Counted from the first letter of the stretch, positions 1,394 through 23,659 are shown. The stretch: 64,000 bases of DNA from IMGVR_UViG_3300007513_000001:62001-126000; one strand, 5' to 3'. Translations and numbers: made by a program. The notes: a model not told the origin generated them from the letters alone.

Positions 1394-1930
1394 ATGCCAG
1401 GCTTAGTTTACAAAAATATACACGAGCTCAAGAAAGAGTTAGATAACTGGGGATATTCTATCTTTACAATATCTGGTGGTTTTGATCCTATTCACGTGGG
1501 TCATATTAGATATATAACTTCCGCAGCAGAGGCTGCTCAAGTAGGATCTCCCGATACTGGTTTCTGGAACCCGGGGGTGTTGGTGGTTATTGTTAATAGC
1601 GATGGTTTTCTAAAGAGAAAGAAAGGATATTCGTTTATGCCCTTAGAAGAAAGAATGGAAATAATCTCCTCTATTGAAGGCGTCGATTTTGTTACTTGCT
1701 GGGATGATGGCACTCAAACAGTAATAGGCGCATTAGAAATACTGAAACCTCAATTCTTTTTAAAGGGCGGCGACAGATGCGATCCAGAGAGTGTACCAGA
1801 ATTCTCGACATGCGATAAAATTGGTTGCGAAGTGCTTTTTGACATAGGGGGAAAAGAAAAGGTTCAAAGCTCTTCAGAGCTGGTGCGGCAATATGAAAAC
1901 ATTAGACTCAAAAAAGATAAAAAGAAATAA
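1394..1930 (+). CDS. Cytidylyltransferase-like nucleotidyltransferase (TagD/RibL/RfaE-II superfamily)
   Basis: SGGFDPIHVGH (HxGH) motif, KGGDR, and a C-terminal SSSEL(V) motif. Confidence 0.85.
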   Translation: MPGLVYKNIHELKKELDNWGYSIFTISGGFDPIHVGHIRYITSAAEAAQVGSPDTGFWNPGVLVVIVNSDGFLKRKKGYSFMPLEERMEIISSIEGVDFVTCWDDGTQTVIGALEILKPQFFLKGGDRCDPESVPEFSTCDKIGCEVLFDIGGKEKVQSSSELVRQYENIRLKKDKKK

Positions 1931-2507
1931 AAAAACGACTGATATTCTAAGAGAATATATTAGATTCATACAAGAAGATGTAGGAGGAATCGACTCTGTT
2001 AATATTCTTTCACAATACGCGCATAGAGACCAAAAAAGAAGAACTGGAGAACCCTATTTTTTACACCCGCAAGAAGTTTCTAACATAGTAAAAAAATATT
2101 ACCCGGGAAATAAAGTAGCTTATTATTCTGCGCTTCTCCATGATTCAATGGAGGATGGATTAGATTTAGGCAACTTTGAAGATGAAGATGAGCTAATAGC
2201 TTTTATACTAGACGCGATATCGGATGATAAGGTTTCTAGTAGAGTAATAGAAGTGGTAAGCTTACTCACTAAAAGAAAAAATGCCCCCTATGATTTTTAT
2301 ATACGTGGTATAATGAATGATCCAGACGCAGTAATTGTTAAGCTCGCTGATATGCTCCACAACCTTTCTGATAACCCGTCGCCCAGGCAAATAGTCAAAT
2401 ATGGAAAAGCTGTTAGGGATATATCAGATTCTTCTCAGGGCCCACCGACGTTTGTTAATAGGTCGCACTGGAATGCTCTACTAAAATTAACGCAAACAGA
2501 AAAGTAG
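1893..2507 (+). CDS. Stand-alone RelA/SpoT-type HD hydrolase (small alarmone hydrolase, Mesh1-like)
   Basis: AHRDQKRRTGEPYFLHP, LLHDSMED and VKLADMLHN motifs; no synthetase domain; exact start uncertain. Confidence 0.85.
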   Translation: MKTLDSKKIKRNKKTTDILREYIRFIQEDVGGIDSVNILSQYAHRDQKRRTGEPYFLHPQEVSNIVKKYYPGNKVAYYSALLHDSMEDGLDLGNFEDEDELIAFILDAISDDKVSSRVIEVVSLLTKRKNAPYDFYIRGIMNDPDAVIVKLADMLHNLSDNPSPRQIVKYGKAVRDISDSSQGPPTFVNRSHWNALLKLTQTEK

Positions 2508-2555
2508 AATGCTAATTTAGTTTATTTCTAATCTAAAATTAACATAATTAGAAAT

Positions 2556-3737
2556 ATGTCGATATTCAAGCACCATAAATCCTCTGGCGATAGATCAGCT
2601 TCAGATCGCTCTCGTCATAAAGGAAAAATAGAGAAAGCTATAAAAGAAGGCATCCACCACATTGTTGCTGAAGAAAGCATCATTGGCCAGGATGGAAAAA
2701 AGAAATTTAAGATTCCTGTTAGAGGGATAAAAGAATATCGCTTTGTATATGGAAAAAACTCTAGTAAAAAAGTTGGAGCTGCGCCTGGAAAAAATATTAG
2801 AAAAGGTCAAACAATAGGAAAAAAAGATTCCAGCGACCAAGGACCCGGGCAGGGAAATAAGCCAGGAAATGAAAAGGGCGAAGAATACTATGAGGTAGAA
2901 ATAACTCTAGAAGAATTAGCTTCTTACTTGTTTGATAATCTTGAGTTGCCAGAGCTTGAAAAGAAGCAAATGAAGAAAATTCTTTCTGAAAAACCAAAGC
3001 GACATGGATATCGAAACAAGGGGATCCGTCCGCGGCTAGACAAAAAAGAAACAGTAAAAAGAATGCTTCGAAGAAAAAATATGTCTAAAAGGCATAAAGA
3101 AATCGAAGAAGAAGATGATTTTTCTTTTAACCAAAGAGACTTAAGATATAAACACATTAAAAAGAAGTTTAATCAGCATTCAAATGCAGTGATATTCTTT
3201 GTAATGGATATTTCAGGGTCGATGACGGAAAACAAAAAATATTTAGCTAGAAGCTTTTTCTTTCTTTTATATCATTTTGTAAGATCTAAATACGAAAATA
3301 CAGAATTAGTTTTTATTGCCCACGATTCGCAAGCTTATGAAGTGAGCGAAGACCAATTTTTTAAAAGAGGGTCTTCTGGAGGAACTATAGTTTCTTCTTC
3401 TACAGAGATGGTTTTAGACATTGTCAGCAAAAGGTACCACCCAAGCAGCTGGAATATCTACTTGTTCCAGTGTAGCGACGGAGACAACTGGCCGTCAGAC
3501 AATGAGAAATTAGCTGACCATATAATAAAATTAATACCGATGGTTCAGCTTTACGGATATTGCGAAATAGTGCCATCTGACGACAGGCTTAGATGGGCTG
3601 ATGATAGCAAAGGATTGGGGGCTATGGTGTTTAAGCCGTTGAGTGGTTTTAATCTAAAAGTTGCAGATATTAGTTCTCCCGAAGATATTTGGCCTGCTTT
3701 TAAATCATTTTTCGGAGGTAGGAGTTTAGATGTCTGA
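2556..3737 (+). CDS. yeaH: YeaH/YhbH (DUF444) family VWA-domain protein
   Basis: N-terminal DRSASDRSRH, Gly-rich linker, MIDAS-like MDISGSM...GGT...SDGDN. Confidence 0.9.
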   Translation: MSIFKHHKSSGDRSASDRSRHKGKIEKAIKEGIHHIVAEESIIGQDGKKKFKIPVRGIKEYRFVYGKNSSKKVGAAPGKNIRKGQTIGKKDSSDQGPGQGNKPGNEKGEEYYEVEITLEELASYLFDNLELPELEKKQMKKILSEKPKRHGYRNKGIRPRLDKKETVKRMLRRKNMSKRHKEIEEEDDFSFNQRDLRYKHIKKKFNQHSNAVIFFVMDISGSMTENKKYLARSFFFLLYHFVRSKYENTELVFIAHDSQAYEVSEDQFFKRGSSGGTIVSSSTEMVLDIVSKRYHPSSWNIYLFQCSDGDNWPSDNEKLADHIIKLIPMVQLYGYCEIVPSDDRLRWADDSKGLGAMVFKPLSGFNLKVADISSPEDIWPAFKSFFGGRSLDV

Positions 3738-5043
3738 TTGGAGTCTTAAAGATTTAGAATTCTGGGATGAAAAGATATGCAAAATTGCAGAAGAGTGTAA
3801 TTTAGACTGGTATCCTATCACTTATGAAACATGCGACTACTATGAGATGATAGGGCACATGTCATATCACGGCATGCCATCGCATTATAACCATTGGTCT
3901 TTTGGCAAAAGTTTCGAAAGAACTCATCAAATGTATAATCTTGGTATGGAAGGCTTGCCCTATGAATTGATTATTAATTCAAATCCTTCTATATCTTATC
4001 TCATGAGAGAAAACCCTCTATATTTACAAATTCTTATAATGGCACACTGCGTAGGGCATTCAGATTTCTTTAAAAATAATAGAACTTTTGAGCTTACACA
4101 TGCAGACACTATTGTTTCTTCTTTAAGGAACGCCAAAAAGAGAATTCAGTCTTATATTGAAGATCCCAGCATTGGAATAGAAGAAGTAGAAAAAATAATA
4201 GATGCGGCTCACACCCTGCAGTTTCAAACCTACAGATATCCAAAAGAATATATTTCCAATAAAAAGAAAAAAGAAGAGCTAAAACTTTATTTAAAATCTC
4301 AGAGCGAAGCAGGAAAAGATGTAGATTTTTCTGTTTTAGACAACACACCTCTCGAACCCGAATATGATATATTGGGCTTTTTATTAGAATATTCTGACTC
4401 TCTAGAAGAGTGGGAAAGAGATATATTAGAAATAGTTAAAGTAGAATCTAATTACTTTTTACCACAAATTAAAACTAAAATTATGAATGAGGGATGGGCT
4501 TCTTATTGGCATTATACTATTCTTCATAAATTAGATTTACCGCAAAAATATCATTTGCCATTTCTAAAAAGCCACAACCAAGTTATTAAGCCTCATATAG
4601 GTGCTATTAATCCTTATCATTTGGGGTTTGAAATATTTAGAAGAATTGAAGAACGCGATGGAATTGAAGAATGTTTTTTAGCTAGAGAAATTCATCACGA
4701 TGAATCTTTCATTCGCCAATATCTAACTGAGGAAGATTGTCGAGATTTAAATTTATTTTCTTATGCTAATTTTGGGGATAAAATTAAAATAACTGATGTT
4801 TCTGATAAAGAAAGTTGGAAAATAGTGAGAGATGATTTAATTAAAAGAACGGGAACCAACAACATACCAGTAATTTATGTTGATTCAATAGACTTAGGGA
4901 ACATGTTAGTTTTACATCACGAACACGACGGAAGAGATCTAGAAATAGACCATGCAGAAAAAGTAGTGGATCATATAACTACGCTCTGGAAAAATCCAGT
5001 TAAATTATTAACAATCATTGAAGATGAACCATTTGAAATTTAG
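3730..5043 (+). CDS. spoVR: SpoVR/YcgB family protein
   Basis: GMPSHYNHWSFGK, YELIINSNP, MAHCVGHSDFFKNN, KIMNEGWASYWH; 8-nt overlap with yeaH. Confidence 0.92.
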   Translation: MSDWSLKDLEFWDEKICKIAEECNLDWYPITYETCDYYEMIGHMSYHGMPSHYNHWSFGKSFERTHQMYNLGMEGLPYELIINSNPSISYLMRENPLYLQILIMAHCVGHSDFFKNNRTFELTHADTIVSSLRNAKKRIQSYIEDPSIGIEEVEKIIDAAHTLQFQTYRYPKEYISNKKKKEELKLYLKSQSEAGKDVDFSVLDNTPLEPEYDILGFLLEYSDSLEEWERDILEIVKVESNYFLPQIKTKIMNEGWASYWHYTILHKLDLPQKYHLPFLKSHNQVIKPHIGAINPYHLGFEIFRRIEERDGIEECFLAREIHHDESFIRQYLTEEDCRDLNLFSYANFGDKIKITDVSDKESWKIVRDDLIKRTGTNNIPVIYVDSIDLGNMLVLHHEHDGRDLEIDHAEKVVDHITTLWKNPVKLLTIIEDEPFEI

Positions 5044-5051
5044 AGGGGAAC

Positions 5052-6992
5052 ATGCCAAAAAAGAAAACAGAAGACTTTCTTAAAATAATAGAAAATCAGA
5101 GAAATACAAAAAAAGAAGAACGTTTCAATGGAACTTTTTTAGAATATCTAGAAGAAGTTCAGAACAATCCCTCTATAGCGGATCACGCTCATAAAAAACT
5201 TTATGACACTATTGCTAATTTTGGATTCGAGGTTTTATCTGATGAAGATCCTCGAAAACGAAAAATATTTGATGGTGAAAATATAAAGATTTATGATTAT
5301 TTCAAGAGCGAATTTTTTGGTATGGAGCAAGTTCTTTCTAGATTAATGAGATTTTTAAAAGCTGCTTCTCTCAAGGGAGAAGAAAGTAGACAAGTATTGC
5401 TCTTGATGGGTCCAGTTGGAGCTGGTAAATCTGCTCTAGTTGAACATATAAAAAGAGCTATGGAGCATGCTCCAAATTATTACCACTTAGCGGGAGATCC
5501 TCAAAGAGGAGAACCGCTTCAACTAGTGCCAAGAGCGCTTAGGGAACAATTTGAAAGCATGATCGGTGTAAAAATCGAAGGCGACATCAGTCCCGTGGCA
5601 AGATATAAGCTCTTAGAAGAACATGGCGGTAAGTACGAACAGTTCCCCATAGTACAATCATCGTATTCTCAAAGGGGTCGCCGCGGGATTGCTGTCGTTC
5701 CTCCAATGGATGCTAACAGTCAAGACGTTTCGGTCTTAATAGGCTCAGAAGATATATCTAAGCTAGACAAATATTCAGAAGACGACCCCCGGATTTTATC
5801 GCTCAACGGTGCATTCAACGTTGGAAATAGAGGCATTGTTGAACTTGTTGAAGTCTTTAAGAATGAGATCGAATTTCTTCACACTATTATTACAGCGACC
5901 CAGGAAAAAAGAGTTCCGTCTCCAGGGAAGCATGACATGGTGTTTTTTGACGGTGTTATTTTAGCACACTGTAACGAAGCAGAGTGGAATAGATTCAGAT
6001 CAGAGCATACTAACGAAGCTATTCTAGATAGAATTGTTAAAATTAATGTACCGTATGTTTTAGAGCTGAATAAAGAAATAAAGATTTACGAGAAAATATT
6101 GGGAAGATCAGACTTTAAAGCACATATAGCGCCCCACACTATTAAGATAGCTTCTATGTTTTCAATCATGTCGAGATTAAAAAGTTCTCAAAAATGTGAT
6201 CTTCTTACGAAGATGAAAATTTACAATGGCGAAGAAGTAATTGAAAAAGGAAGAGTCAAAAAGATTGATATTAGAGACTTAAGAGAAGAATCTAGAGGGG
6301 AGGGTATGAAAGGAATTTCTACTCGATTCATCATGAAATGCATTGATGCAGCGCTTACCGATTCTGATTCTGGGTACATTACTCCTATTTCCGTTATGGA
6401 ATCAATTAAAAAGCAAGTTAACGAACAGCTAATTGACGAAGATTTTAGAGAAAGATGTCAAGAAATTATTGGCGGAATTGTTAGAGAAGAATACCTTAAA
6501 ATTCTTGAAAACGAAATAGCCAAAGCGTTCGTCACCGCCTATGAAGAACAAGCTCAAGCTTTATTTGATACGTATCTTGATAATGCTGAAGCTCATACAA
6601 CTCATGCTAGGATCAAGGACAAGATCACTAAAGAAGAACGCGAGCCAGATGAGAAGTATATGAGAGCGATCGAAGAGCAAATTGGGATTACTGGATCTTC
6701 AAGAGACGGATTTCGATCTGACGTAACCGCTTATATGTTTGCTAAAATGAGAAGAGGCGAAAAAGTCAACTATACTTCTTATGAGCCACTAAAAGAAGCA
6801 ATTGAAAGTTATTTAGTTGGATCTGTTAAAGATATGGCGCGAATCGTTACTAAGTCAAAAACTCGTGATGACGACCAAAAGAAAAAATATAGTGACATGG
6901 TTCAAACTATGGTCGATGAATATGGATATTCCCCAGATTCTGCCGAAGAAGTTTTAACTTACGCCAGTAATAATCTTTGGCGAGATAGTTAA
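5052..6992 (+). CDS. prkA: PrkA/YeaG family AAA+ ATPase (annotated Ser kinase)
   Basis: FFGME, Walker A GPVGAGKS, RGIVELVEVFK, NEAILDRI, VPYVL, GMKGISTRF; 646 aa is typical of the family. Confidence 0.92.
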   Translation: MPKKKTEDFLKIIENQRNTKKEERFNGTFLEYLEEVQNNPSIADHAHKKLYDTIANFGFEVLSDEDPRKRKIFDGENIKIYDYFKSEFFGMEQVLSRLMRFLKAASLKGEESRQVLLLMGPVGAGKSALVEHIKRAMEHAPNYYHLAGDPQRGEPLQLVPRALREQFESMIGVKIEGDISPVARYKLLEEHGGKYEQFPIVQSSYSQRGRRGIAVVPPMDANSQDVSVLIGSEDISKLDKYSEDDPRILSLNGAFNVGNRGIVELVEVFKNEIEFLHTIITATQEKRVPSPGKHDMVFFDGVILAHCNEAEWNRFRSEHTNEAILDRIVKINVPYVLELNKEIKIYEKILGRSDFKAHIAPHTIKIASMFSIMSRLKSSQKCDLLTKMKIYNGEEVIEKGRVKKIDIRDLREESRGEGMKGISTRFIMKCIDAALTDSDSGYITPISVMESIKKQVNEQLIDEDFRERCQEIIGGIVREEYLKILENEIAKAFVTAYEEQAQALFDTYLDNAEAHTTHARIKDKITKEEREPDEKYMRAIEEQIGITGSSRDGFRSDVTAYMFAKMRRGEKVNYTSYEPLKEAIESYLVGSVKDMARIVTKSKTRDDDQKKKYSDMVQTMVDEYGYSPDSAEEVLTYASNNLWRDS

Positions 6993-7024
6993 TGTACAAT
7001 TAGCTTCTATTTATTATTTTTTTA

Positions 7025-7312
7025 ATGGAGGCTTATATGAATAATAAAGTAGTTTTTGGCATGCCAGAAGTTCTAGTGGCTGGATCTTTTTTGCTTTTAG
7101 TTTCTGGCTTAACTTGGCAGGGGTGGTCTATTTTTGTGCTCGGTATGTTTGGAGCATTTATGAGATTTAGCTTAGAAATACAGAAAGCAAAAGTAGCTGA
7201 AGAAAAACAAAAAGAAGTAGTTGATAAAGTTGAAAACTTTGGAAAAACAGTTGCAGAACTAGCTGCATTTGGTCAGGTGTTTGGAAGCAAGAATGACGGT
7301 AAACTTCACTAA
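7025..7312 (+). CDS. Small membrane protein
   Basis: Two hydrophobic segments followed by a charged C-terminal half. Confidence 0.6.
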   Translation: MEAYMNNKVVFGMPEVLVAGSFLLLVSGLTWQGWSIFVLGMFGAFMRFSLEIQKAKVAEEKQKEVVDKVENFGKTVAELAAFGQVFGSKNDGKLH

Positions 7313-8645
7313 TTTTTATAGAGTTGAAGACACTGAATCTTTTTTAATTAAATCTAAACCTACGATCAAGAATTTTGCTAGAAATTTTAAAAAGTTGTCT
7401 AGTGGAAAAATAGAATTTTTTCTTAAAGATACGGTTGTTAAAGCTTCTTGGATAGACGGACTTAGATTAATATTAGAGTGCTTCGAAGAAGATAACAAGA
7501 TCATTAGAGATATTGTAGCAGAAGGTTTTATCTCAGTAGAAAAAATGCATCCGGGATCGGGATATTTTTATTTAATCGCTTTTCTACAGGGGCTAATGTA
7601 TAATTCTAACGATTGCTATTATGAAGAAATCCACTCTATTTCTAAACTTGCGAAAAGAGCAGATCTTTCTGAGCTTAAAGCTAGCATCAACTTAAATGAA
7701 GACGAATTCATAAAAAGCTTCGTAGATTTTATTATCAATCAAGCTGGTTTTAATTGCTCTTTTTCTTTAAAAGAAACACCGCAGTTTAATTCTAGGTTTA
7801 TTGTTTCTTCTTCGTATGATTTTCCAATAGCAGCACCCGTTGAATTTCTTCACGGAATCAATGTTTCAAATATTTCTATTTTTGATTCTAAAGCTATTGT
7901 TTACGATGGAGTAATAGAAAGTGTGGGAGAAATTCATCATGTTTTAAGCTATTTTTCTGAAAATAAATTAGATTTAATATTAGTTGCAAGAGGGTTTTCA
8001 GATGATGTAATCAATACTTTGGCTGTAAATTATAATAGAAAATCTCTAAGAGTCATTCCTGCGAGACTACTTTTTTCACTAGAGAGCATAAACTCTCTTA
8101 AAGATTTTTCCGTTGCAGCAGACGCAGAATTTGTAGATTCAACAAGCGGAAAATCCATATCTAGTTTAGATTTTAAAGAATTAAGATCTATTCACCACAT
8201 AGAAATCGACCACTTAAAATGTGCCATGCGAAACTCTAGAACTTCTAGTCGCGTTTTATCTTTAGTCTTTCAAATAAACAAAAAAATAGAAGCGACTGAT
8301 ATAGAAGAAAAAAAGGAAATTCTTCGAAAAAGAGTGGCTTCATTAAATGGGAGAAAAACAACAATTTATTTAGGGCAGCATTTAAGAAACGCAAAAGGAA
8401 TAACTAGAGACAGAATACTTTCTACTATCGGTATTTTAAACACAATAAGCCGGCATGGAATACTTAATTTAAAAGAAATAGAAGGAGAGAATTTGATTAA
8501 TCTTCGGAGTATTGTTAACTTTCTGACGGATTCTAATATGGAATTAGTCCCTGCAGCGTGTTTTATTCATGGCACCCTGAATGGTTTTAAGACAGCAAAC
8601 CAAGTAAAAAATGGAAGTTATATGCTTTTGCTGGATAATCAATGA
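7269..8645 (+). CDS. Divergent GroEL/Cpn60-like protein (apical domain recognisable, ATP motif degenerate); likely start at ATG 7293
   Basis: [17 protein letters not shown]...[19 protein letters not shown] resembles GroEL ILLADKKIS...[40 protein letters not shown] resembles ERVAKLAGGVAVIKVG; no GDGTTT. Confidence 0.7.
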   Translation: [458 protein letters not shown]

Positions 8646-9124
8646 TAACCCCTCGAGACTCAAAGTGGTTTTGTGGAGGTGGAAAACCGGCTGCTTTTTG
8701 TCAAATATTAGATGAAATTATAAATTCAGACCCTTCAGCAGAAATATATGTTGGAACGGATTCAGATCCCAGTAGAAAAAAAGTTGCTTTCGTAACTGGT
8801 GTTGTAATAAGATATCCGGGCAATGGTGCAAACTATTATTGGTCTCGAAGATATATAGAGTCAAATAAATTTTTTAATTTAGGGCATCGGCTAGAGCTAG
8901 AAGTAGCGGACTCAATTGTAGTTGCAACTGTGCTAAGAAAAGAAACTGGAAGAGATAAAATAATAATTCATGCGGACTGTAGTAGCGATCCTAGAAATGC
9001 TAGTTTTGAATTCCTAAACAGGATCACTAGTTATTCTAGAGCTATGGGTTTCACTACTGTGGCTAAGCCTGATAGTTGGGCTGCCAGCTCTGTAGCTGAC
9101 AAGCACGCAAAATCAATTAGCTGA
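8642..9124 (+). CDS. Ribonuclease H-like YkuK (DUF458) family protein
   Basis: IYVGTDS, RLELEV, IHAD, KPDSWAASSVADKH acidic motif pattern. Confidence 0.8.
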   Translation: MITPRDSKWFCGGGKPAAFCQILDEIINSDPSAEIYVGTDSDPSRKKVAFVTGVVIRYPGNGANYYWSRRYIESNKFFNLGHRLELEVADSIVVATVLRKETGRDKIIIHADCSSDPRNASFEFLNRITSYSRAMGFTTVAKPDSWAASSVADKHAKSIS

Positions 9125-9171
9125 TTTTACTTAGAGTCAAAATTGATTAGTTTGATCTATGGAGGTTTGTC

Positions 9172-9426
9172 ATGCCTAGAAGTAAGAAAACAACAATAAA
9201 ATCAACACCACAGCCGCCCCAAATAAAAGAAGGCGTTGTTGGAAGAATGACTAGAGACGTCATCGAGCTCCACGGTCAGTATTTAAAAGAAGAGCTAGTA
9301 GGTAATCCGGAAGCGTATAGTTTAAATCGCGACCAATTACAGAAAGTGTGCGAGTTAGTAGATGCTATTACTGTAAGAACTCAAGATAAAGCTTTAAGAC
9401 AAGTAGTCTCTATTTTTAAATCTTAG
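9172..9426 (+). CDS. Hypothetical protein
   Basis: GGAGG Shine-Dalgarno 5 nt before the ATG; tiles with its neighbours. Confidence 0.65.
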   Translation: MPRSKKTTIKSTPQPPQIKEGVVGRMTRDVIELHGQYLKEELVGNPEAYSLNRDQLQKVCELVDAITVRTQDKALRQVVSIFKS

Positions 9427-9435
9427 CGCAAAATT

Positions 9436-9897
9436 ATGCACGGAATAAGGCATCTAATAAATTGTCATTGCATTTTACCGCAATTTAAAAAATCTACAAA
9501 CCCCCTATTTCATAAATTTGTCGTCTTTTCAATAATAGACGACGACGATAATGTTGTACCGTCATATGCACAATGTAATAATTGTTCTATAGTTCATAAA
9601 ATTATAGACTTATGCAATTCTGAAATTGTAAAAGGTAAAGAGCAACTAGCAAGTTTGCCAACCATTACAGATATTAAGCTAGAATTCCCAGATTCCTTGT
9701 CTGAATTGTTAGTTTCTTATAAATCGGATATAACCATATGGCAACATGCTCAGTTTATTCTGAGGCATCAGAGGTGGGGAGAAAAAATAATAATTCAAAG
9801 AGAAGAAGATGAATCAAGTGTTCAGGGTAAAATACTAACTTTTGTTTCGCCTATTCAATTTAGAATGGAAAGTTTTCAAGAGGATAACGATGTCTAA
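9436..9897 (+). CDS. Hypothetical protein with a putative Zn-binding CxC...CxxC...C set
   Basis: HLINCHCILPQF, AQCNNC, DLC. Confidence 0.65.
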   Translation: MHGIRHLINCHCILPQFKKSTNPLFHKFVVFSIIDDDDNVVPSYAQCNNCSIVHKIIDLCNSEIVKGKEQLASLPTITDIKLEFPDSLSELLVSYKSDITIWQHAQFILRHQRWGEKIIIQREEDESSVQGKILTFVSPIQFRMESFQEDNDV

Positions 9898-10129
9898 TAA
9901 AATTTATGGAAAAACTGAAGAAGAAGAAAAGCTTGAGAATGCTATTGAAGCACGCGAAATATCGCAGAAGATAATCCAACATGGGGTATCGCAATTTCAA
10001 ATAGCTAAAATTATATATTTGCTATCTTTAGAGCTAGAAGATAGAAATGTATTATCTGATGTGAGCGAGGCAATAAAGCCTTTACTATCAGAAGAAAATG
10101 ATAAAAATTCAAATATCATTATTTCTTAA
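9890..10129 (+). CDS. Hypothetical protein (start moved from 9842 to ATG 9890)
   Basis: AGGA RBS before ATG 9890; 8-nt overlap with the upstream gene. Confidence 0.6.
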   Translation: MSNKIYGKTEEEEKLENAIEAREISQKIIQHGVSQFQIAKIIYLLSLELEDRNVLSDVSEAIKPLLSEENDKNSNIIIS

Positions 10130-10140
10130 AGGAGAAAGTA

Positions 10141-10344
10141 ATGGCTAACAACGATATTCTTGAAAAGTGGCGAGAGCTTAAAGTAACAGTAGAAAGTTTA
10201 GAGCTTGATGTTCACAAGCACGCAAACGGAAATTCATCCGCTGGCGTAAGAGCTAGAAGAGGATTAAGACTTCTAAAAAGCACTACAGCTGAGCTTGTTA
10301 AATTATCTCTTACCCATGAAAAAGAAAAAAAGTCTAATAAGTAA
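10141..10344 (+). CDS. Histone H1-like Hc1-family small basic protein
   Basis: GNSSAGVRARRGLRLLK matches the Hc1 core pattern (GNKAAGxRARK...); GGAG RBS. Confidence 0.7.
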   Translation: MANNDILEKWRELKVTVESLELDVHKHANGNSSAGVRARRGLRLLKSTTAELVKLSLTHEKEKKSNK

Positions 10345-10353
10345 AAATATAGC

Positions 10354-10761
10354 GGGCCCGAAACGGCTTCGACGGGGTAGTAGAGAAAGAGAGTGCAGGT
10401 GGTCTCACGAAACAGGTGACCTTAAAATCGGTTTCAAAACTTTAATTGCCAATAACAATTATCACTTCGAAGCTGACCGCTTAGCGGCCTAATTCGCGGG
10501 GTTTCTTAAGACCTTGATACCCAACTTAAGATAACAGGTAGATCCCTGCGAAAACAAAAAATCACAATGGTTCCCTGGTACAAACTAGTACCACTTAGAG
10601 ATAAGTGAATACCTTTTGTAACAGGTGGATTTCCAAGGCTACATAGGAAAAGGGAACGTTTGTAGCTACCTTTCTAATTTGGGAATAAATTAGACAAACC
10701 TGTGAATGACTTGACTTTGAAGCTATTGCGGACGCGGGTTCGACTCCCGCCGGGTCCACCA
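10354..10761 (+). ncRNA. ssrA: tmRNA, 408 nt; tag ORF 10448-10492 encodes ANNNYHFEADRLAA*
   Basis: 5' GGGCCCG pairs with 3' CGGGTCC (10751-10757) including the G3-U alanine wobble; encoded ACCA end; T-arm GCGGG-TTCGACT-CCCGC (10734-10750); 5' TTCGACGGGG motif; internal ORF ending LAA-TAA. Confidence 0.96.
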
Positions 10762-10796
10762 TTTTATATGTTACGTAGACATGATATATTAAAAAT

Positions 10797-11513
10797 ATGC
10801 TTAACCTTCCAAGGAATCAAGTTCAGCTTATAAGTTTTCTTTTGTTTCATGCCGGCGCCTTAATTCTTATTATGGGAGGCTGGCACAATGAAATGGGGAG
10901 ATCTGTTGGTATAGCTCTTATGGCGGGATCTATATGGTTTGTCATGATGAGTGAATCTGTGTTCCTAACAAAGGTTCAAAACGAAATGCAACAAGCGCTT
11001 GACGGTTTTTCTCGAAAAAGAGAATGCGAAATTCAAGAACTTCTTTATTTTCTCAAACAATCTCAACTCTCGGCCGGGCCATTCGATAGTTGGGAGGGCG
11101 CAAAAGATTTATGCAATAAATTAAATCAACCCTCATTTGTAATGGGCCCAACATTTAACATTATAAAAGCAAACAAAGGGATGACAGATTTGCTGGGTTG
11201 GTCAGATGGTGGTTTAGATGGAATAGCAGGACATGTTATTAATGATAATTCTATAATGCCAATAGTTGGAGAAATCTGTACCCATCCACCGCATGACGAA
11301 AAAATAGAATTATCTTTAAGATATGTCTATTTGCACAAAAGCAAAAAAAGAGTTTTTGGACTCTTATCTTTAAGGAAAATAGTTGATGGCGGATTCTTTA
11401 TGATTTTTCAGCCTGATGAGCATTGCATAATAAAAGATGCAGATCTCAAGAAAATATTGAGTGAACATAATGGATCTGGAGAATACGAATCTGCTATATC
11501 AGAGAGCGAATAG
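10797..11513 (+). CDS. Membrane-anchored protein with a PAS-like domain and no output domain
   Basis: Two N-terminal TM segments, a helical linker, then PSFVMGPTFNIIKANKGMTDLLGWS, which resembles the PAS core. Confidence 0.55.
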   Translation: MLNLPRNQVQLISFLLFHAGALILIMGGWHNEMGRSVGIALMAGSIWFVMMSESVFLTKVQNEMQQALDGFSRKRECEIQELLYFLKQSQLSAGPFDSWEGAKDLCNKLNQPSFVMGPTFNIIKANKGMTDLLGWSDGGLDGIAGHVINDNSIMPIVGEICTHPPHDEKIELSLRYVYLHKSKKRVFGLLSLRKIVDGGFFMIFQPDEHCIIKDADLKKILSEHNGSGEYESAISESE

Positions 11514-11516
11514 ATT

Positions 11517-11771
11517 ATGGAAGATCCAGCAAAAGAAGATAGAATTCTAATATCAGCTATAGCTAGCTCTATATCTAAAATTGCTTTTTATATAAGCTTA
11601 TGCATCATTGCAGGAATGTTTTTCTCAAACTGTAAAGTAGATGCTGATGCTATCGAAACGTGTGAAAATGCTTGCGGAGTAGCTCAAGGAATAAAAGAAG
11701 TAACTGCATGGAGCTGTACATGTAATGACTTAAGTACTAACCCAGAATCAACGTGGGTTTTGCCCAATTAG
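11517..11771 (+). CDS. Small Cys-rich membrane or lipoprotein-like protein
   Basis: Hydrophobic stretch ending FFSNC, then CENACG...CTC. Confidence 0.55.
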   Translation: MEDPAKEDRILISAIASSISKIAFYISLCIIAGMFFSNCKVDADAIETCENACGVAQGIKEVTAWSCTCNDLSTNPESTWVLPN

Positions 11772-11833
11772 TCAATTGTTTTCTTTTGTTAATATTTACT
11801 ATTGTCCAAAGGTAATAAAATTAGGGGTAAAAT

Positions 11834-13006
11834 GTGGCTTCTAGAACTAATAACCTGTTTGGAAGAGATATAAATAAGAAAAAAAAGAAAAAAAAGGATA
11901 CAATTATGACAACCGATCCCAAAGATCCAAATATTGAAGATTCTAACGATGATTACATCAATACACCAGATGCTGGGGACGATTTCGATTTTGTCATGGC
12001 TTATGATGATGATCCCGCAGAAGCCGATGAGCGACTTCTTCAAGATAACTTAGCGCGCAGCGCTATTTCTTGCGGTTTTATTGGAGTCGGTGGAGGCGGT
12101 GGAAAGCTGGCTAAAGCTTTTTTAGATTTAGGGTTTAATAAAACTCTTTTAGTCAACACCACTAAAAAAGATCAGCCTGGTGGATTAGACGAGAATAATT
12201 TTGTTTTAGTTCCGGGCGCTGACGGCGTGGGGAAAGATATAGATCTTGGTAAAAAGGTTCTTCAAGAAAACAGTGCATTTGTAGAAGACGCAGTACGTAC
12301 GAGATTGGGGCAGTTAGACTGGTTGTTTGTTTGTGCGGGCGGTGGTGGTGGCACGGGGAGTGCTTCTTACGAACTGCATGATTCTTTAACTCGATATCTA
12401 TCTTCGATCGAAGCCTCAGGAAAAGTGGTTTATATTGTTTCGAAACCAACGGCGCAAGAAATGCTTAATCCAACAATTTCAAAAAACTATAAATCTCTAG
12501 CAAGTGATATATCTGATACTCCTCACATTATTATTGATAATGAAAAGCAGCTCCAGCTCTTAAGAGGTAAAGTTGGAATGATGAACATGTTCCCTGCTGC
12601 AAATAAAAACTTTGCTAAATTAATAGCTCAAGTTCTTAAATTAGCAGACGAGCACACCGAAATACAAACGTTTGATTCTAAAGATTTAGAAAAATGTTTA
12701 AGTGCTAATGGAAGAATAGTAGTGGGTAGCACTGTAGTGCGAGACGTTAATAGAAATGATTTAGGATCTTTGGTCTACCAAGGGTGCTTAAGATCTTCTC
12801 CATGTCCCACTCCATCTGGTAACGCAAAAACAGGAACTCTTCTTTTGGTTGTAGATAATAATATGGCTTCGGACCCGGACGTAAGTCGTAGACTTGAATC
12901 TGCTTTTTCTTACGTCGGTGGTAGAGCTTCTACTTTATTCTCCGGTGTATATGTAAAAGAAGGAATTCCTGGACTTATAGCTATCACACTTCTTGGCGGA
13001 TTATAA
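11834..13006 (+). CDS. Tubulin/FtsZ-family GTPase (TubZ/PhuZ/CetZ-like); likely start at ATG 11906
   Basis: GFIGVGGGGGK (T1 loop), AGGGGGTGS signature, NEKQ, FDSKDL (T7-like); acidic N-terminal extension; ends at the core with no C-terminal tail. Confidence 0.9.
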   Translation: MASRTNNLFGRDINKKKKKKKDTIMTTDPKDPNIEDSNDDYINTPDAGDDFDFVMAYDDDPAEADERLLQDNLARSAISCGFIGVGGGGGKLAKAFLDLGFNKTLLVNTTKKDQPGGLDENNFVLVPGADGVGKDIDLGKKVLQENSAFVEDAVRTRLGQLDWLFVCAGGGGGTGSASYELHDSLTRYLSSIEASGKVVYIVSKPTAQEMLNPTISKNYKSLASDISDTPHIIIDNEKQLQLLRGKVGMMNMFPAANKNFAKLIAQVLKLADEHTEIQTFDSKDLEKCLSANGRIVVGSTVVRDVNRNDLGSLVYQGCLRSSPCPTPSGNAKTGTLLLVVDNNMASDPDVSRRLESAFSYVGGRASTLFSGVYVKEGIPGLIAITLLGGL

Positions 13007-13196
13007 AATGAAAATAAAGTTTATAGAAGCCTTAAAAGCTAGAATCAGTACTAACATCGTAGAAGTTGAGCTAGAAGAAGACGAAGAAATAACTGATGAA
13101 ATTATTAAATCTCTGTACGAACTAAAGACAGCTTACGATTTGCCAACAGAAGAAGTAGAATTTGCTGTTAAATCTAGAGCTTTAAGAAATTCTTAA
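12993..13196 (+). CDS. Hypothetical acidic protein
   Basis: Overlaps the tubulin stop and fills the gap before the convergent gene. Confidence 0.55.
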   Translation: MADYKMKIKFIEALKARISTNIVEVELEEDEEITDEIIKSLYELKTAYDLPTEEVEFAVKSRALRNS

Positions 13197-13444
13197 ATTT
13201 GATTAAGCGTAGCTATAGTTTTCAATTTTTGGAAAATAGATTTTTCAATTTGACATATTCTCATTCTTGTTACATTAAAAATATCTCCAATTTCTTGAAG
13301 GGTGTGCGGGCCTTTTTTAGAAGCTATAATAGTGCAATTATAGTTCTTACTAGACGATATCCAATATTTACAAGACACTTTTTCGCAAGTAAAGCATTGC
13401 TTTTCGTATTCTTCAAAGCATATTTTATTTTTTTTCTCTTCCAT
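13193..13444 (-). CDS. Small protein: Cys-rich N-terminus plus sigma-70 region 4 HTH
   Basis: HTLQEIGDIFNVTRMRICQIEKSIFQKL closely follows the sigma region 4.2 pattern (TLEEIG..F.VTRERIRQIE.KAL.KL); five Cys upstream; AAGGA RBS on the minus strand. Confidence 0.85.
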   Translation of the reverse strand: MEEKKNKICFEEYEKQCFTCEKVSCKYWISSSKNYNCTIIASKKGPHTLQEIGDIFNVTRMRICQIEKSIFQKLKTIATLNQI

Positions 13445-13477
13445 GAACTAATCCTTAAGATCATATTTATGTTAACA

Positions 13478-13506
13478 AACATAATATTCGGTTTGAAATA
13501 TGTACA
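13478..13506 (-). promoter_or_regulatory. Sigma70-like promoter candidate for the minus-strand sigma-region-4 gene
   Basis: Minus strand reads TGTACA-N17-TATGTT, ~33 nt before the ATG. Confidence 0.4.
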
Positions 13507-13518
13507 GAGGAATATTGC

Positions 13519-14808
13519 ATGAACAATAGAAAAATGTTAGTAGTAGACACAAGCGTTCTACTTTATGATATGAAGTCTATTCATTCTTTTCCTGGTAATG
13601 ATGTTGTTATACCATTGATTGTGCTGGATGAATTAGATAGATTTAAAGAAAAGCCCGGGCTCTTGGGCGAATCTGCTAGATACATTAATCGATTCTTAGA
13701 TAACCTCAGAGAACACGGAAAGTTAGATCAAGGTATTACCATACCAGAGTTCGACCAGACCATCAGAGTAGCTCTGAAGACCCCCAGTTATGACATTCTG
13801 AACGATTGGGATCAAGACAAGGGAGATAACAGGATAATTTCTGTTGCTCTTGGTCTTAAGAACGAAAATCCAGATTTTCCAGTAAAGGTTATAACCAAAG
13901 ATATTAACCTTAGAGTAAAATGCGATGCGCTAGGAATACAGGCGGAAGATTATTTCGCAGATCATATCGATATTGAATCTGAGGGAGAGTATACTGGATG
14001 GAGAGAGATAGCTCTTATGCCAGAACAAATAGATAGATTTTATTCTTCTAATTTTGAAGCTCCCAAAGATTTAGCTTTAATAGAAAATGAATTTGTTGTT
14101 GCAAAATCTGGAAGTAGTTCTTTTATAGCCCAGCATAGAAATGGAAAGTTTAATAAATTAAATTGCAAAATTGAATCTATTTCTAAAATAGAACCAAAAA
14201 ATAAAGAGCAAAAATTTGCTATAGAGTCTTTATTACACGATGATATTCCACTAGTTACTTTAACTGGCTTAGCGGGTTCTGGAAAAACGTTTTTAACTTT
14301 AATGGCAGCACTAGAAGCTAAGAATCATGGGACTTACTCTAGAATTGTATTTACAAGGTCTATTCAAAGTGTCGGTAAAGATATGGGTTATTTGCCAGGA
14401 GACATTAAAGAAAAAATGGCTCCTTGGTTAGCTCCAATAGTAGATAACTTTAGACATGTATTTAAAGATGTGACTTATTTTGACATGATGATAGAAAGAG
14501 GCGAAATAGAAATAGCTCCGCTTTCTTACATTCGCGGAAGAACTTTTAACGATTGTTTCGTGATTGTCGATGAAGCTCAAAATGCTACTATTCATGAATT
14601 AAAAACTATCATAACTAGAATTGGCACAAATTCTAAAGTCGTTCTTCTTGGAGATACAGATCAAATAGACACTCCTTATATTGGAAAGAATTCTAACGGC
14701 TTAAGCATTGTAATCAGTAAATTTAAGAATAGCCCGCTACACTCGCATGTTCATTTAGCTAGAGGACAGAGGTCAGAACTTGCATCTGCAGCATCAAAAA
14801 TTCTGTGA
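13519..14808 (+). CDS. phoH: PIN-PhoH fusion (PhoH2/YlaK-like)
   Basis: PIN motifs VVDTSVLL, DNRII, TKDINLRVK; PhoH motifs GLAGSGKT, YIRGRTF, IVDEAQN, GDTDQID. Confidence 0.92.
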   Translation: MNNRKMLVVDTSVLLYDMKSIHSFPGNDVVIPLIVLDELDRFKEKPGLLGESARYINRFLDNLREHGKLDQGITIPEFDQTIRVALKTPSYDILNDWDQDKGDNRIISVALGLKNENPDFPVKVITKDINLRVKCDALGIQAEDYFADHIDIESEGEYTGWREIALMPEQIDRFYSSNFEAPKDLALIENEFVVAKSGSSSFIAQHRNGKFNKLNCKIESISKIEPKNKEQKFAIESLLHDDIPLVTLTGLAGSGKTFLTLMAALEAKNHGTYSRIVFTRSIQSVGKDMGYLPGDIKEKMAPWLAPIVDNFRHVFKDVTYFDMMIERGEIEIAPLSYIRGRTFNDCFVIVDEAQNATIHELKTIITRIGTNSKVVLLGDTDQIDTPYIGKNSNGLSIVISKFKNSPLHSHVHLARGQRSELASAASKIL

Positions 14809-14837: not shown

Positions 14838-15155
14838 ATGGCCAAAATAATAAATAAAAATCAATATCGAAAAATTTATCCCAGAATAAGAAAACGCCCG
14901 GTCTATGCTTCGTTGGGAAGTGGCGACTGTAGTGTAGAAACAGCTATCTTAACTTTTTCAGGAGATAGCGAAGTATCTTATACTTTTAGTGGCGTTTATA
15001 ATGAAGGCTATCCCGTAGTGACAGTGGTAGCAGCAGGAACAGATAACAATGTAAATTTGTTTATATCTTCAATTTCTAAAACCTCAGTTACTATAAGCTC
15101 TAGCGCAGCATTTACTGGTACAGCTCACTTAGTTGCTGTAAAGAGGTCCACTTGA
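14838..15155 (+). CDS. Small beta-rich putative virion protein (paralog 1)
   Basis: PVVTV...NVNLFISSISKTSVTISSS..FTGTAH, similar to the next ORF. Confidence 0.55.
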   Translation: MAKIINKNQYRKIYPRIRKRPVYASLGSGDCSVETAILTFSGDSEVSYTFSGVYNEGYPVVTVVAAGTDNNVNLFISSISKTSVTISSSAAFTGTAHLVAVKRST

Positions 15156-15373: not shown

Positions 15374-15423
15374 TTTTTTAATAGCTGTATCATATTTACT
15401 AACAGTTTAAGAAAGGTAATACA

Positions 15424-23651: not shown

Positions 23652-23659
23652 ATTTTATA

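What the first reader, a model, noticed from the sequence alone, without database searches (positions are those of the whole stretch)
1893..14808. Clustered starvation and proteostasis override cassette
Seen within ~13 kb: alarmone hydrolase, YeaH/SpoVR/YeaG, GroEL-like protein, Hc1-like protein, tmRNA and PIN-PhoH. Established: each counterpart acts in stationary phase, ribosome rescue, protein quality control or phosphate stress. Inference: the block is a co-selected toolkit for productive infection of starved or dormant hosts rather than a random set of auxiliary genes.
Basis: inference. Interest (0 to 1): 0.6.

Follow-up and report, generated by a model that had tools for sequence, protein, structure and literature searches.

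The report
Stress-gene neighbourhood in marine jumbo phage
The listed stress-type genes really do sit side by side in this 293-kb marine T4-like phage, but related phages show two separately inherited gene modules plus movable extras, not one purpose-built starvation cassette.

Summary
Observation confirmed. Window 1893-14808 encodes, all on the + strand: a small RelA/SpoT-type HD hydrolase, YeaH-SpoVR-PrkA, a GroEL-fold protein, an Hc1-like protein, a full-length tmRNA and PIN-PhoH.

Interpretation only partly supported.
- The strictly co-inherited unit is the trio YeaH-SpoVR-PrkA. It is contiguous in 80/80 related loci, in 5/5 distant phages and in bacteria. PrkA ranks 2nd-5th most conserved of all shared proteins.
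- A second module (GroEL-like, Zn-protein, small ORF, Hc1, PIN-PhoH) stays together. In one nested clade of 18 loci it is separated from the trio, by 130-150 kb in the two records of that clade read whole.
- The HD hydrolase is next to the trio in 5/63 scorable loci and lies 64 kb away in another relative.
- The tmRNA sits in the block in 12/53 loci and lies 18-180 kb away in four relatives.
- The phage's canonical GroEL and its ClpP lie 140-190 kb from the block. The in-block GroEL-like protein lacks the GDGTTT ATP loop.
- Genome-wide, 69-80% of conserved neighbour pairs stay neighbours, so the block's synteny is not exceptional.
- Co-expression and starved-host benefit remain untested.

The parts
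1394..1930 (+). Cytidylyl/adenylyltransferase-like protein (resembles HldE domain II). Upstream neighbour, not a stress gene.
   Evidence: Pfam CTP_transf_like 39.7 bits. NCBIfam rfaE_dom_II E 1.5e-16, below cut-off. Syntenic with the helicase in 18 loci.
1893..2507 (+). Small alarmone hydrolase-like HD protein (204 aa, single domain). Accessory gene.
   Evidence: HD_4 34.1 bits. Matches Rel/SpoT hydrolase domains and MESH1 in the PDB with catalytic motifs kept. Present next to the trio in only 5/63 loci.
2556..3737 (+). YeaH/YhbH (DUF444, vWA-like). First gene of the trio.
   Evidence: DUF444 368.5 bits. Closest curated model is spore_yhbH at 388.8 bits. Found in 77/80 loci; the 3 without it are cut off upstream of the trio.
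3730..5043 (+). SpoVR/YcgB family protein. Overlaps the yeaH stop by 8 nt.
   Evidence: SpoVR 410.4 bits plus SpoVR_C. Found in 79/80 loci.
5052..6992 (+). PrkA/YeaG AAA+ serine kinase/protease-family protein. Starts 9 nt after spoVR.
   Evidence: AAA_PrkA 457 bits plus PrkA_C 265 bits. Walker A invariant. 68-79% identical across 80 loci. Ranks 2nd-5th most conserved of the shared proteome.
7025..7312 (+). Small ORF upstream of the GroEL-like gene. Probably a membrane protein, not GroES.
   Evidence: No Pfam or PHROG hit. Atlas structural neighbours are small membrane proteins and its own model is weak. Present in 34 loci.
7269..8645 (+). Divergent GroEL-fold protein (likely start ATG 7293). 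The ATP loop is not conserved.
   Evidence: AF2 pLDDT 91.5. Foldseek matches GroEL/Hsp60 at E 1e-24. Has PGSGYFY where the phage's canonical GroEL has AGDGTTT. Only 15-31% identity among relatives.
8642..9124 (+). RNaseH_like (PF04308) protein. Accessory.
   Evidence: 88.7 bits. Present in 15/59 loci with 7 changes on the tree.
9436..9897 (+). Conserved Zn-binding protein of unknown function.
   Evidence: Invariant H6 C10 C12 H26 C47 C50 H54, with C60 nearly invariant. AF2 pLDDT 90.6. No significant PDB fold match. Present in 58 loci.
9842..10129 (+). Small conserved ORF of unknown function.
   Evidence: Present in 57 loci, always between o9436 and Hc1.
10141..10344 (+). Hc1-like histone H1-type basic protein.
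   Evidence: Pfam Hc1 32.7 bits against 23.5. Present in 57 loci.
10354..10761 (+). tmRNA with tag ANNNYHFEADRLAA.
   Evidence: ARAGORN. Rfam 107.3 bits covering the full model. Homologous tags in relatives at other genome positions. No SmpB in the genome.
10797..11771 (+). Two accessory ORFs of unknown function (238 and 84 aa).
   Evidence: No family hits. A homologue in only 1 of 80 loci.
11834..13006 (+). FtsZ/tubulin-family GTPase. Accessory, tends to travel with the tmRNA.
   Evidence: Tubulin 24.8 bits, below cut-off. FtsZ in the PDB at E 4e-8. Present in 11/53 loci. Co-varies with the tmRNA in about 3 of 4 independent pairs, p 0.25.
13199..13522 (+). Small ORF overlapping the PIN-PhoH start.
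   Evidence: Present in 25 loci directly upstream of PIN-PhoH.
13519..14808 (+). PIN-PhoH (PhoH2-type predicted RNA helicase/RNase).
   Evidence: PhoH 188.6 bits plus PIN_4 106.7 bits. NCBIfam PhoH2 278 bits, below the equivalog cut-off. PDB 3b85 at E 1e-35. Linked to the trio in 35/44 loci.
14838..19815 (+). Downstream conserved neighbours: small ORFs and a 1463-aa protein with no family hit.
   Evidence: Syntenic in about 40 loci. No Pfam hit. This shows that the synteny extends beyond the 'stress' genes.

Best explanation
The block is a stretch of the conserved, same-strand gene order of a cosmopolitan family of marine T4-like jumbo phages. It is not a dedicated cassette. It is a composite of three layers.

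1. A captured bacterial prkA-yeaH-spoVR operon, re-ordered to yeaH-spoVR-prkA with overlapping or abutting ORFs. It has become a near-core gene set of the family and most likely acts as one unit, as it does in bacteria. In bacteria it is a signalling/AAA+ pathway switched on by (p)ppGpp, sigma-N or RpoS at growth arrest. Inference: a phage copy would make that pathway independent of the host's regulatory state.

2. A separately inherited module: a GroEL-fold protein with a degenerate nucleotide loop, a Zn-binding protein, a small ORF, an Hc1-like DNA-binding protein and a PIN-PhoH RNA helicase/nuclease.

3. Position-labile accessories dropped into plastic junctions. A small alarmone hydrolase sits upstream of the trio. 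A tmRNA (with or without an FtsZ-like gene) sits between Hc1 and PIN-PhoH.

The window phage carries the fullest combination. The adjacency of the three layers is historical. Selection acts on each layer, and probably on the genome-wide repertoire, but not on their physical clustering.
For: Shown by tool results:
- The phage is T4-like (Gp23 major capsid protein, S77 prohead protease), 293 kb with terminal repeats.
- The trio is contiguous in 80/80 IMG/VR loci, in five distant phages with either gene order, and in bacteria as PrkA-YeaH-SpoVR.
- PrkA ranks 2nd-5th in identity among all shared proteins. It is present in 3/3 large relatives chosen by capsid protein rather than by PrkA.
- A nested clade of 18 loci has the trio without the rest. 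In G004 and G005, GroEL-like, o9436, helicase, Hc1 and PIN-PhoH remain clustered 130-150 kb from the trio.
- Accessories flip repeatedly on the tree: HD 5/63, tmRNA 12/53 (at least 6 changes), FtsZ-like 11/53, RNaseH-like 15/59.
- tmRNAs with homologous tags lie elsewhere in G001, G002, G003 and G006. HD_4 lies 64 kb from PrkA in G006.
- Canonical Cpn60 (with AGDGTTT) is at G000:254.8 kb and ClpP at 213.8 kb.
- Null expectation: 69-80% of all conserved neighbour pairs remain within 5 kb in relatives.

From the literature:
Against: - Several accessory traits co-occur in the same genomes. All four HD-bearing loci also carry the in-block tmRNA, and L241 repeats the full window architecture. This could reflect co-selection, but the independent-pair tests are underpowered (p 0.25-0.5).
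- In the unrelated 595-kb phage LR756511 a tmRNA lies 1.9 kb downstream of PrkA-YeaH-SpoVR on the same strand.
- In G004 the relocated trio sits within 2-8 kb of the canonical GroEL and ClpP.
- These are hints of a recurrent trio-proteostasis/ribosome-rescue neighbourhood.
- No expression data resolve transcription units, and no function of any of these phage genes has been tested.
Confidence: 0.65

Rival explanations
1. The whole 13-kb block is a co-selected toolkit that keeps translation, proteostasis and nutrient signalling running, so that the phage can replicate in starved or dormant marine hosts. The SAH removes (p)ppGpp, the trio replaces the host's alarmone-dependent pathway, the tmRNA rescues stalled ribosomes, and the GroEL-like protein and PIN-PhoH handle proteins and RNA.
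For: - All components are real.
- The full architecture recurs in at least one other relative, L241, and partly in L020, L027 and L035.
- Bacterial prkA operons are induced by (p)ppGpp and starvation.
- A tmRNA lies next to a trio in the unrelated phage LR756511.
- The trio lies near GroEL and ClpP in G004.
- The relatives keep a tmRNA and PhoH somewhere in the genome, so a genome-level toolkit is possible.
Against: - Linkage is not maintained. The trio is unlinked in a persisting clade of 18 loci. The tmRNA and HD lie elsewhere or are absent in most relatives.
- The real GroEL and ClpP are 140-190 kb away in this genome.
- The in-block GroEL-like protein lacks the ATP loop.
- The block's synteny is no higher than the genome background.
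- PhoH is reported in about 40% of marine phages and has no demonstrated starvation role in phages (statement in PMC12484599).
- The R. etli prkA mutant has no stress phenotype.
Confidence: 0.17
2. Counter-defence and host-takeover reading. The HD protein hydrolyses products of toxic alarmone synthetases ((pp)pApp, or pyrophosphorylated tRNA made by CapRel/FaRel-type toxSAS). PIN-PhoH degrades host RNA. The tmRNA clears the ribosomes that this, or host abortive-infection RNases, leave stalled. The trio and the GroEL-like protein are unrelated neighbours.
For: - SAH-type HD motifs are kept.
- toxSAS systems act in antiphage immunity and are neutralised by SAHs, and phage-encoded SAHs are already annotated (abstracts and text found).
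- The patchy, position-labile distribution of HD and tmRNA is typical of accessory arms-race genes.
Against: - No substrate information exists.
- No toxSAS or host is known.
- PIN-PhoH is a stable family-wide gene rather than a patchy one.
- This reading explains only three of the components.
Confidence: 0.1
3. Functional pairing of the trio with the GroEL-like protein. The degenerate chaperonin is an adaptor or substrate platform for the PrkA AAA+ kinase/protease, and the two were selected to be adjacent.
For: - The GroEL-like gene starts within 0-0.4 kb of the prkA stop in most loci of two large clades (58/75 scorable loci).
- RNA-library contigs lie on both genes.
Against: - The adjacency was broken once, and that lineage diversified into 18 loci.
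- In G004 and G005 the GroEL-like gene stays with Hc1 and PhoH, not with the trio.
- Evolutionary rates differ strongly: PrkA 70-79% identity against 15-31% for the GroEL-like protein.
- No binding test was run.
Confidence: 0.08

Closest known systems
Bacterial prkA(yeaG)-yeaH(yhbH)-spoVR(ycgB) operon
   Same: - The same three Pfam families, full length.
- Contiguous and co-directional.
- Walker A kept.
- Closest bacterial homologues are 51-57% (PrkA) and 41-49% (YeaH, SpoVR) identical.
   Different: - Gene order is rotated to yeaH-spoVR-prkA.
- It is encoded by a lytic-type T4-like jumbo phage, as a near-core gene set.
- It scores below NCBIfam equivalog cut-offs.
- It has no recognisable sigma-N or RpoS regulatory context.
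Trio in cultured and huge phages (Thermus phiYS40/TMA/MN1, Ralstonia RsoM2USA, LR756511, LR756502)
   Same: - PrkA, DUF444 and SpoVR are adjacent in each.
- Thermus phages share the YeaH-SpoVR-PrkA order.
   Different: - Only about 30% identity, so these are probably independent acquisitions.
- Their neighbours differ.
- PhoH is absent or 26-45 kb away.
- A tmRNA is nearby only in LR756511.
Phage-encoded small alarmone hydrolases (e.g. Pseudomonas Pakpunavirus Adele gp032) and bacterial SAH/MESH1
   Same: A single HD domain of about 200 aa with Rel/SpoT hydrolase motifs.
   Different: - Substrate unknown.
- Here it is placed directly upstream of a (p)ppGpp-regulated-type operon, but only in a few relatives.
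Phage chaperonins (GroEL homologues of jumbo phages, PHROG 5725) and bacterial GroEL
   Same: A three-domain GroEL fold at high model confidence.
   Different: - About 12-15% identity to GroEL.
- 458 aa.
- The GDGTTT loop is replaced.
- No Cpn10 in the genome.
- It co-exists with a canonical phage Cpn60 that keeps AGDGTTT.
tmRNAs of huge phages and megaphages (e.g. phage G)
   Same: One-piece tmRNA with a tag ending in AA, and no phage SmpB.
   Different: The tag family ANNN...LAA is specific to this phage family, and the gene occupies different positions in different relatives.

Membership tests
PrkA-YeaH-SpoVR stress-signalling operon | All three families present, full length | tested here: met
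   DUF444 368 bits, SpoVR 410 bits, AAA_PrkA 457 bits plus PrkA_C 265 bits.
PrkA-YeaH-SpoVR stress-signalling operon | Genes contiguous and co-directional, conserved as a unit | tested here: met
   An 8-nt overlap and a 9-nt gap. Contiguous in 80/80 loci, in 5 distant phages and in the bacterial loci.
PrkA-YeaH-SpoVR stress-signalling operon | Canonical order prkA-yeaH-spoVR | tested here: not met
   The order here is yeaH-spoVR-prkA. The bacterial loci L244-L252 have prkA first.
PrkA-YeaH-SpoVR stress-signalling operon | AAA+ Walker A of PrkA | tested here: met
   GPVGAGKS is invariant across 13 phage sequences.
PrkA-YeaH-SpoVR stress-signalling operon | Induction by (p)ppGpp, RpoS or sigma-N at growth arrest; kinase or protease activity | not testable with these tools
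   Known only from bacterial literature.
Small alarmone hydrolase (SAH) | HD_4 domain above threshold, with H..HD..ED..D/N hydrolase motifs | tested here: met
   34.1 bits against 27.2. The alignment to Rel hydrolase domains shows LHP, HD, ED and DMLHN.
Small alarmone hydrolase (SAH) | Single-domain protein without a synthetase domain | tested here: met
   204 aa with only HD families hit.
Small alarmone hydrolase (SAH) | Hydrolysis of (p)ppGpp or (p)ppApp | not testable with these tools
   Needs an enzyme assay.
Group I chaperonin (GroEL) | Equatorial-intermediate-apical fold | tested here: met
   AF2 pLDDT 91.5. Foldseek E 1e-24 with TMq 0.72 to GroES-bound forms.
Group I chaperonin (GroEL) | Passes the Cpn60_TCP1 / GroEL family thresholds | tested here: not met
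   No Pfam hit. NCBIfam 47 bits against a cut-off of 397. A genome-wide PF00118 search finds only the canonical copy.
Group I chaperonin (GroEL) | GDGTT(T) nucleotide-binding loop | tested here: not met
   The window has PGSGYFY and relatives have PYLGDYF at the corresponding helix-loop-helix. The canonical phage copy has AGDGTTT. The positional equivalence is inferred from the model, not from a superposition.
Group I chaperonin (GroEL) | Co-chaperonin GroES | tested here: not met
   No Cpn10 in the genome. The upstream small ORF looks like a membrane protein.
tmRNA | Covariance-model match over the gathering score, full length, with a tag reading frame | tested here: met
   107.3 bits against 47, model positions 1-374. 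ARAGORN tag ANNNYHFEADRLAA*.
tmRNA | SmpB partner | tested here: not met
   No PF01668 in the phage genome. It would have to use the host's SmpB.
PhoH2 (PIN-PhoH) | N-terminal PIN plus C-terminal PhoH P-loop ATPase | tested here: met
   PIN_4 106.7 bits and PhoH 188.6 bits. The NCBIfam PhoH2 model is covered end to end but scores below the equivalog cut-off (278 against 680).
Co-selected gene cassette | Linkage of all members kept across relatives beyond background synteny | tested here: not met
   The trio is unlinked in a clade of 18 loci. HD is present in 5/63 and the in-block tmRNA in 12/53. Background neighbour retention is 69-80%.
Co-selected gene cassette | Co-expression as one unit | tested here: inconclusive
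   Promoter and terminator scans give no excess over shuffles. No family-specific promoter motif lies between genes in the block. Only two short RNA-library contigs lie on it.

The most novel reading that the evidence does not exclude
The PrkA-YeaH-SpoVR pathway is an essential, family-defining infection function of a cosmopolitan group of marine T4-like jumbo phages. It is as conserved as their prohead protease and tail tube. These phages repeatedly assemble around it a changing set of alarmone, ribosome-rescue and chaperonin-like genes. If so, the phages would offer a tractable handle on the still unknown biochemical role of this widespread bacterial starvation operon.
Probability: 0.2. Interest if true: 0.65.

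Novelty: new member of a known kind. Interest (0 to 1): 0.4.

Why it matters
The prkA-yeaH-spoVR triad is one of the most widely conserved bacterial starvation-induced operons, and its mechanism is still unknown. The window shows it as a near-core, very slowly evolving gene set in a large family of uncultured marine jumbo phages. It sits beside a phage tmRNA, a small alarmone hydrolase and a degenerate second chaperonin. This suggests these phages manipulate growth-arrest physiology.

The comparative data caution against reading gene neighbourhoods in large phages as purpose-built cassettes. Background synteny explains the clustering, and the individual parts move independently.

Tried and rejected
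- Megablast of the block against 50,697 phage records: no match. The family is known only from metagenomes.
- Sigma-70 promoter and intrinsic-terminator scans: no excess over shuffles, so uninformative.
- T4 late-promoter motif TATAAATA: 3 sites against 8 expected.
- De novo upstream motif search: found an early-like promoter motif elsewhere in the genome, with no copy between genes in the block.
- o7025 as a GroES-like co-chaperonin: rejected. There is no Cpn10 hit in the genome, and its Atlas neighbours are membrane-like proteins.
- Fold of o9436: a confident model but no significant PDB match (Foldseek E at least 0.18; VIA Z at most 4.1). It stays a Zn-binding protein of unknown function.
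- Host inference from 'MAG' labels: rejected. Contigs L239-L243, labelled Methylococcaceae, Legionellales, Halobacteriovorax, Luteolibacter and Bdellovibrionota, carry the phage synteny and are mis-binned phage DNA.
- Metatranscriptome check: one RNA run holds two short contigs, at 5404-5559 and 7215-7453. This is compatible with transcription, but DNA carry-over is not excluded and there is no timing information.
- The marine jumbo-phage survey paper PMC9123017 mentions none of these genes.
- Correlated gain and loss of tmRNA with the FtsZ-like gene, and of HD with tmRNA: same direction but underpowered.
- Not run: the large protein searches and the complex predictor. The family scans settled the identities, and no binding claim is made.
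- Only genetic code 11 was used. Read laying was given 6,000 bases.

Full report
**Context.** The window is positions 62,001-126,000 of a 293,409-bp IMG/VR virus record with direct terminal repeats. The genome encodes a T4-type major capsid protein (Gp23 family, 254 bits), a gp21-like prohead protease, a gp19-like tail tube protein, RecA, ThyX, thymidine kinase and ClpP, plus eight tRNAs. It is therefore a T4-like jumbo myovirus. The DNA occurs in marine and seawater metagenomes. GC content is about 35%, and almost all genes in the region are on the + strand.

**Observation.**
- HD_4 / RelA-SpoT hydrolase-like protein, 1893-2507. Pfam scores above threshold, and the Rel/SpoT/MESH1 hydrolase motifs are kept.
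- YeaH (DUF444), 2556-3737; SpoVR, 3730-5043; PrkA, 5052-6992. All are full-length matches of 265-457 bits.
- GroEL-like protein, 7269-8645.
- Hc1-like protein, 10141-10344.
- tmRNA, 10354-10761. ARAGORN gives the tag ANNNYHFEADRLAA, and Rfam scores 107 bits over the full model.
- PIN-PhoH, 13519-14808.

**The GroEL-like protein.** Sequence evidence is weak and limited to residues 116-370. An AlphaFold2 model built on 48 family sequences is confident (pLDDT 91.5). It matches full-length GroEL/Hsp60, with Foldseek E 1e-24 and TM up to 0.72 to GroES-bound conformers. Several features argue against a working chaperonin:
- The family evolves very fast. Members are 15-31% identical to the window protein, while PrkA in the related loci is 68-79% identical.
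- The position of the GDGTTT nucleotide loop reads PGSGYFY here and PYLGDYF in many relatives.
- The same genome has a canonical Cpn60 at G000:254,782-256,401 that keeps AGDGTTT.
- There is no Cpn10 in the genome, and the small upstream ORF does not look like GroES.

So the in-block gene is a degenerate second chaperonin paralogue, not the phage's main chaperonin.

**Relatives.** A PrkA-based scan of IMG/VR returned 175 related stretches, and the best 80 were kept (68-79% identity). tblastn, iterated HMM searches and ARAGORN over these loci give a common linear order in about 58 loci:

helicase - (NTase) - (HD) - YeaH - SpoVR - PrkA - (o7025) - GroEL-like - (RNaseH-like) - o9436 - o9842 - Hc1 - (tmRNA, FtsZ-like) - (o13199) - PIN-PhoH - o14838 - 1463-aa protein.

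Genes in brackets are variably present. On a PrkA tree the counts among scorable loci are as follows:

| Feature | Present / scorable | Minimum changes on tree |
|---|---|---|
| HD next to the trio | 5/63 | 2 |
| tmRNA in the block | 12/53 | at least 6 |
| FtsZ-like | 11/53 | 5 |
| RNaseH-like | 15/59 | 7 |
| GroEL-like directly after PrkA | 58/75 | 2 |
| PIN-PhoH within 10 kb | 35/44 | 2 |

The loci that have only the trio form one well-supported nested clade of 18 rows. This points to a single translocation that then persisted and diversified.

**Whole-genome comparisons.** Five large related records were read whole.
- In G001-G003 the arrangement matches the window.
- In G004 (298 kb, terminal repeats) and G005, the trio lies 130-150 kb from a still-clustered GroEL-like, o9436, helicase, Hc1, PIN-PhoH group.
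- tmRNAs with homologous ANNN...LAA tags exist in G001, G002 and G003. They lie at least 18 kb, 28 kb and 180 kb from PrkA. None was found in G004 or G005.

Relatives chosen independently, by capsid protein, give a consistent picture.
- PrkA is present in all three large records.
- PIN-PhoH lies about 5 kb from PrkA in all three.
- A tmRNA is present only in G006, 57 kb from PrkA.
- An HD_4 gene is present only in G006, 64 kb from PrkA.

In the window's own genome, ClpP (213.8 kb) and canonical GroEL (254.8 kb) are 140-190 kb from the block. In G004 those two genes flank the relocated trio, interspersed with UvdE, Fpg, a GDSL hydrolase, a SpoU methylase and a glycosyltransferase.

**Null expectation.** Of all G000 gene pairs that are 5 kb or less apart and conserved in a relative, 69-80% are still within 5 kb in that relative. 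The helicase upstream and the 1463-aa protein downstream are as syntenic as the 'stress' genes. Conserved order across relatives is therefore the background state of this phage family. It cannot by itself show co-selection of the block.

**What is selected.** PrkA ranks 2nd-5th in identity among 84-131 shared proteins. That places it alongside the prohead protease and tail-tube proteins. SpoVR and YeaH are 55-64% identical, against a proteome mean of about 43%. The trio is contiguous in Thermus phages phiYS40 and MN1, in Ralstonia phage RsoM2USA, and in two huge phages of about 600 kb whose PrkA is about 30% identical.

Bacterial homologues found in the genome collection are 51-57% identical and have the order PrkA-YeaH-SpoVR. 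This phage family has YeaH-SpoVR-PrkA.

[quoted passage not shown] Yet its mutant shows no stress phenotype (PMC3188799).

**Mechanism.** Shown: the trio is one inherited unit under strong purifying selection. The second module is a separate inherited unit. HD, tmRNA, FtsZ-like and RNaseH-like genes are accessories at plastic junctions.

Inferred:
- A phage copy of the trio would make a growth-arrest pathway independent of the host's alarmone, RpoS and sigma-N control.
- A small alarmone hydrolase beside it could lower (p)ppGpp or related nucleotides. Alternatively it could undo toxSAS-type defence.
- The tmRNA, which needs host SmpB, could relieve ribosome stalling. Such stalling might be caused in part by RNA cleavage from the PIN-PhoH enzyme.

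None of this has been tested. The starvation labels of PhoH and Hc1 are names inherited from bacteria. One paper states that phoH occurs in about 40% of marine phages and has no demonstrated function there (PMC12484599).

- The full window architecture recurs in L241.
- All four HD-bearing loci also have the in-block tmRNA.
- tmRNA and the FtsZ-like gene change together in about 3 of 4 independent pairs.
- An unrelated huge phage has a tmRNA 1.9 kb downstream of its trio.
- The relocated trio of G004 sits near GroEL and ClpP.

These are suggestive, but they are few events and statistically underpowered.

**Expression.** The promoter and terminator scans, and the T4 late-promoter motif, were uninformative. 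A conserved early-like motif, TGGTATAATAnTACTATAAGG, occurs upstream of genes at window -48.5 to -17.6 kb and near the genome end. It does not occur between genes in the block. One bare TGGTATAAT lies inside the HD gene, 250 nt before yeaH. One metatranscriptome from the source study holds two short contigs, on prkA and on the o7025/GroEL-like junction. That is compatible with transcription, but it gives no timing and does not exclude DNA carry-over.

**Verdict.** The interpretation as one co-selected starvation cassette is only partly supported. There are two co-inherited modules and several mobile accessories, and their juxtaposition in this phage is largely historical. The genuinely notable point is that the bacterial PrkA-YeaH-SpoVR operon is a near-core, highly conserved gene set of a widespread marine jumbo-phage family. 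Phage copies of this trio were annotated before (phiYS40, RsoM2USA), but I found no analysis of them in the searched literature.

Noticed in passing
G000:254782-256401 and G000:213758-214360 (outside the window): The same phage genome encodes a canonical GroEL (Cpn60 215 bits, AGDGTTT kept) and a ClpP protease, 140-190 kb from the block. There is no GroES and no SmpB anywhere in the genome.
   Followed up: yes
window 11834-13006: An FtsZ/tubulin-family GTPase, closer to FtsZ than to PhuZ/TubZ by PDB sequence matches. It is present in only 11/53 relatives and tends to come and go together with the adjacent tmRNA.
   Followed up: partly
window 20049-33726 (and the NTase at 1394-1930): A long run of tightly packed sugar-modification genes: GT2, GT1/GT4, a GT9 heptosyltransferase, epimerases, GDP-mannose 4,6-dehydratase, a DegT aminotransferase, a PfkB kinase and oxidoreductases. 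Together with the HldE-domain-II-like nucleotidyltransferase, this suggests a phage-encoded nucleotide-sugar/glycan pathway.
   Followed up: partly
window 15424-19815: A 1463-aa ORF with no Pfam hit. It is GC-richer (0.41-0.43) than its surroundings (0.35) and is conserved (37-70% identity) in all large relatives, though at varying positions.
   Followed up: no
window 9436-9897: A conserved 153-aa protein with invariant His and Cys residues (H6 C10 C12 H26 C47 C50 H54). The AF2 model is confident, but there is no significant match to any solved structure.
   Followed up: yes
L239-L243 (GenBank MAG contigs NHDW01000006, PBNF01000027, PBIO01000025, CAZMUK010000072, JBBAUR010000009): Contigs filed under bacterial MAGs (Methylococcaceae TMED69, Legionellales, Halobacteriovorax, Luteolibacter, Bdellovibrionota) carry this phage family's gene order. 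One is 305,838 bp. They look like jumbo-phage DNA mis-binned into bacterial genomes.
   Followed up: partly
L151 (LR756511.1 337944-357968, reverse complement), tmRNA at 16337-16689: An unrelated 595-kb huge phage has PrkA-YeaH-SpoVR followed 1.9 kb downstream by a tmRNA (tag ANPEFAMAA) on the same strand, then an AAA ATPase.
   Followed up: partly
L081 840-15628 (G004 about 145.7-160.5 kb): In the clade where the trio moved, its new neighbours are canonical GroEL, UvdE, an AAA ATPase, Fpg, a GDSL hydrolase, a SpoU methylase, a glycosyl/methyltransferase, ClpP and UDPGP. This looks like a mixed island of host-like genes.
   Followed up: partly
G000 13.4-44.4 kb and 245-280 kb (outside the window); window 2306: A conserved extended -10-type motif, TGGTATAATAnTACTATAAGG, lies 34-58 nt upstream of nine genes and is a likely early promoter class. 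A bare TGGTATAAT lies inside the HD gene, 250 nt before yeaH.
   Followed up: partly
window 2556-6992 against the bacterial loci L244-L252: The gene order of the trio is rotated in this phage family and in Thermus phages (YeaH-SpoVR-PrkA), relative to the bacterial operon (PrkA-YeaH-SpoVR).
   Followed up: yes
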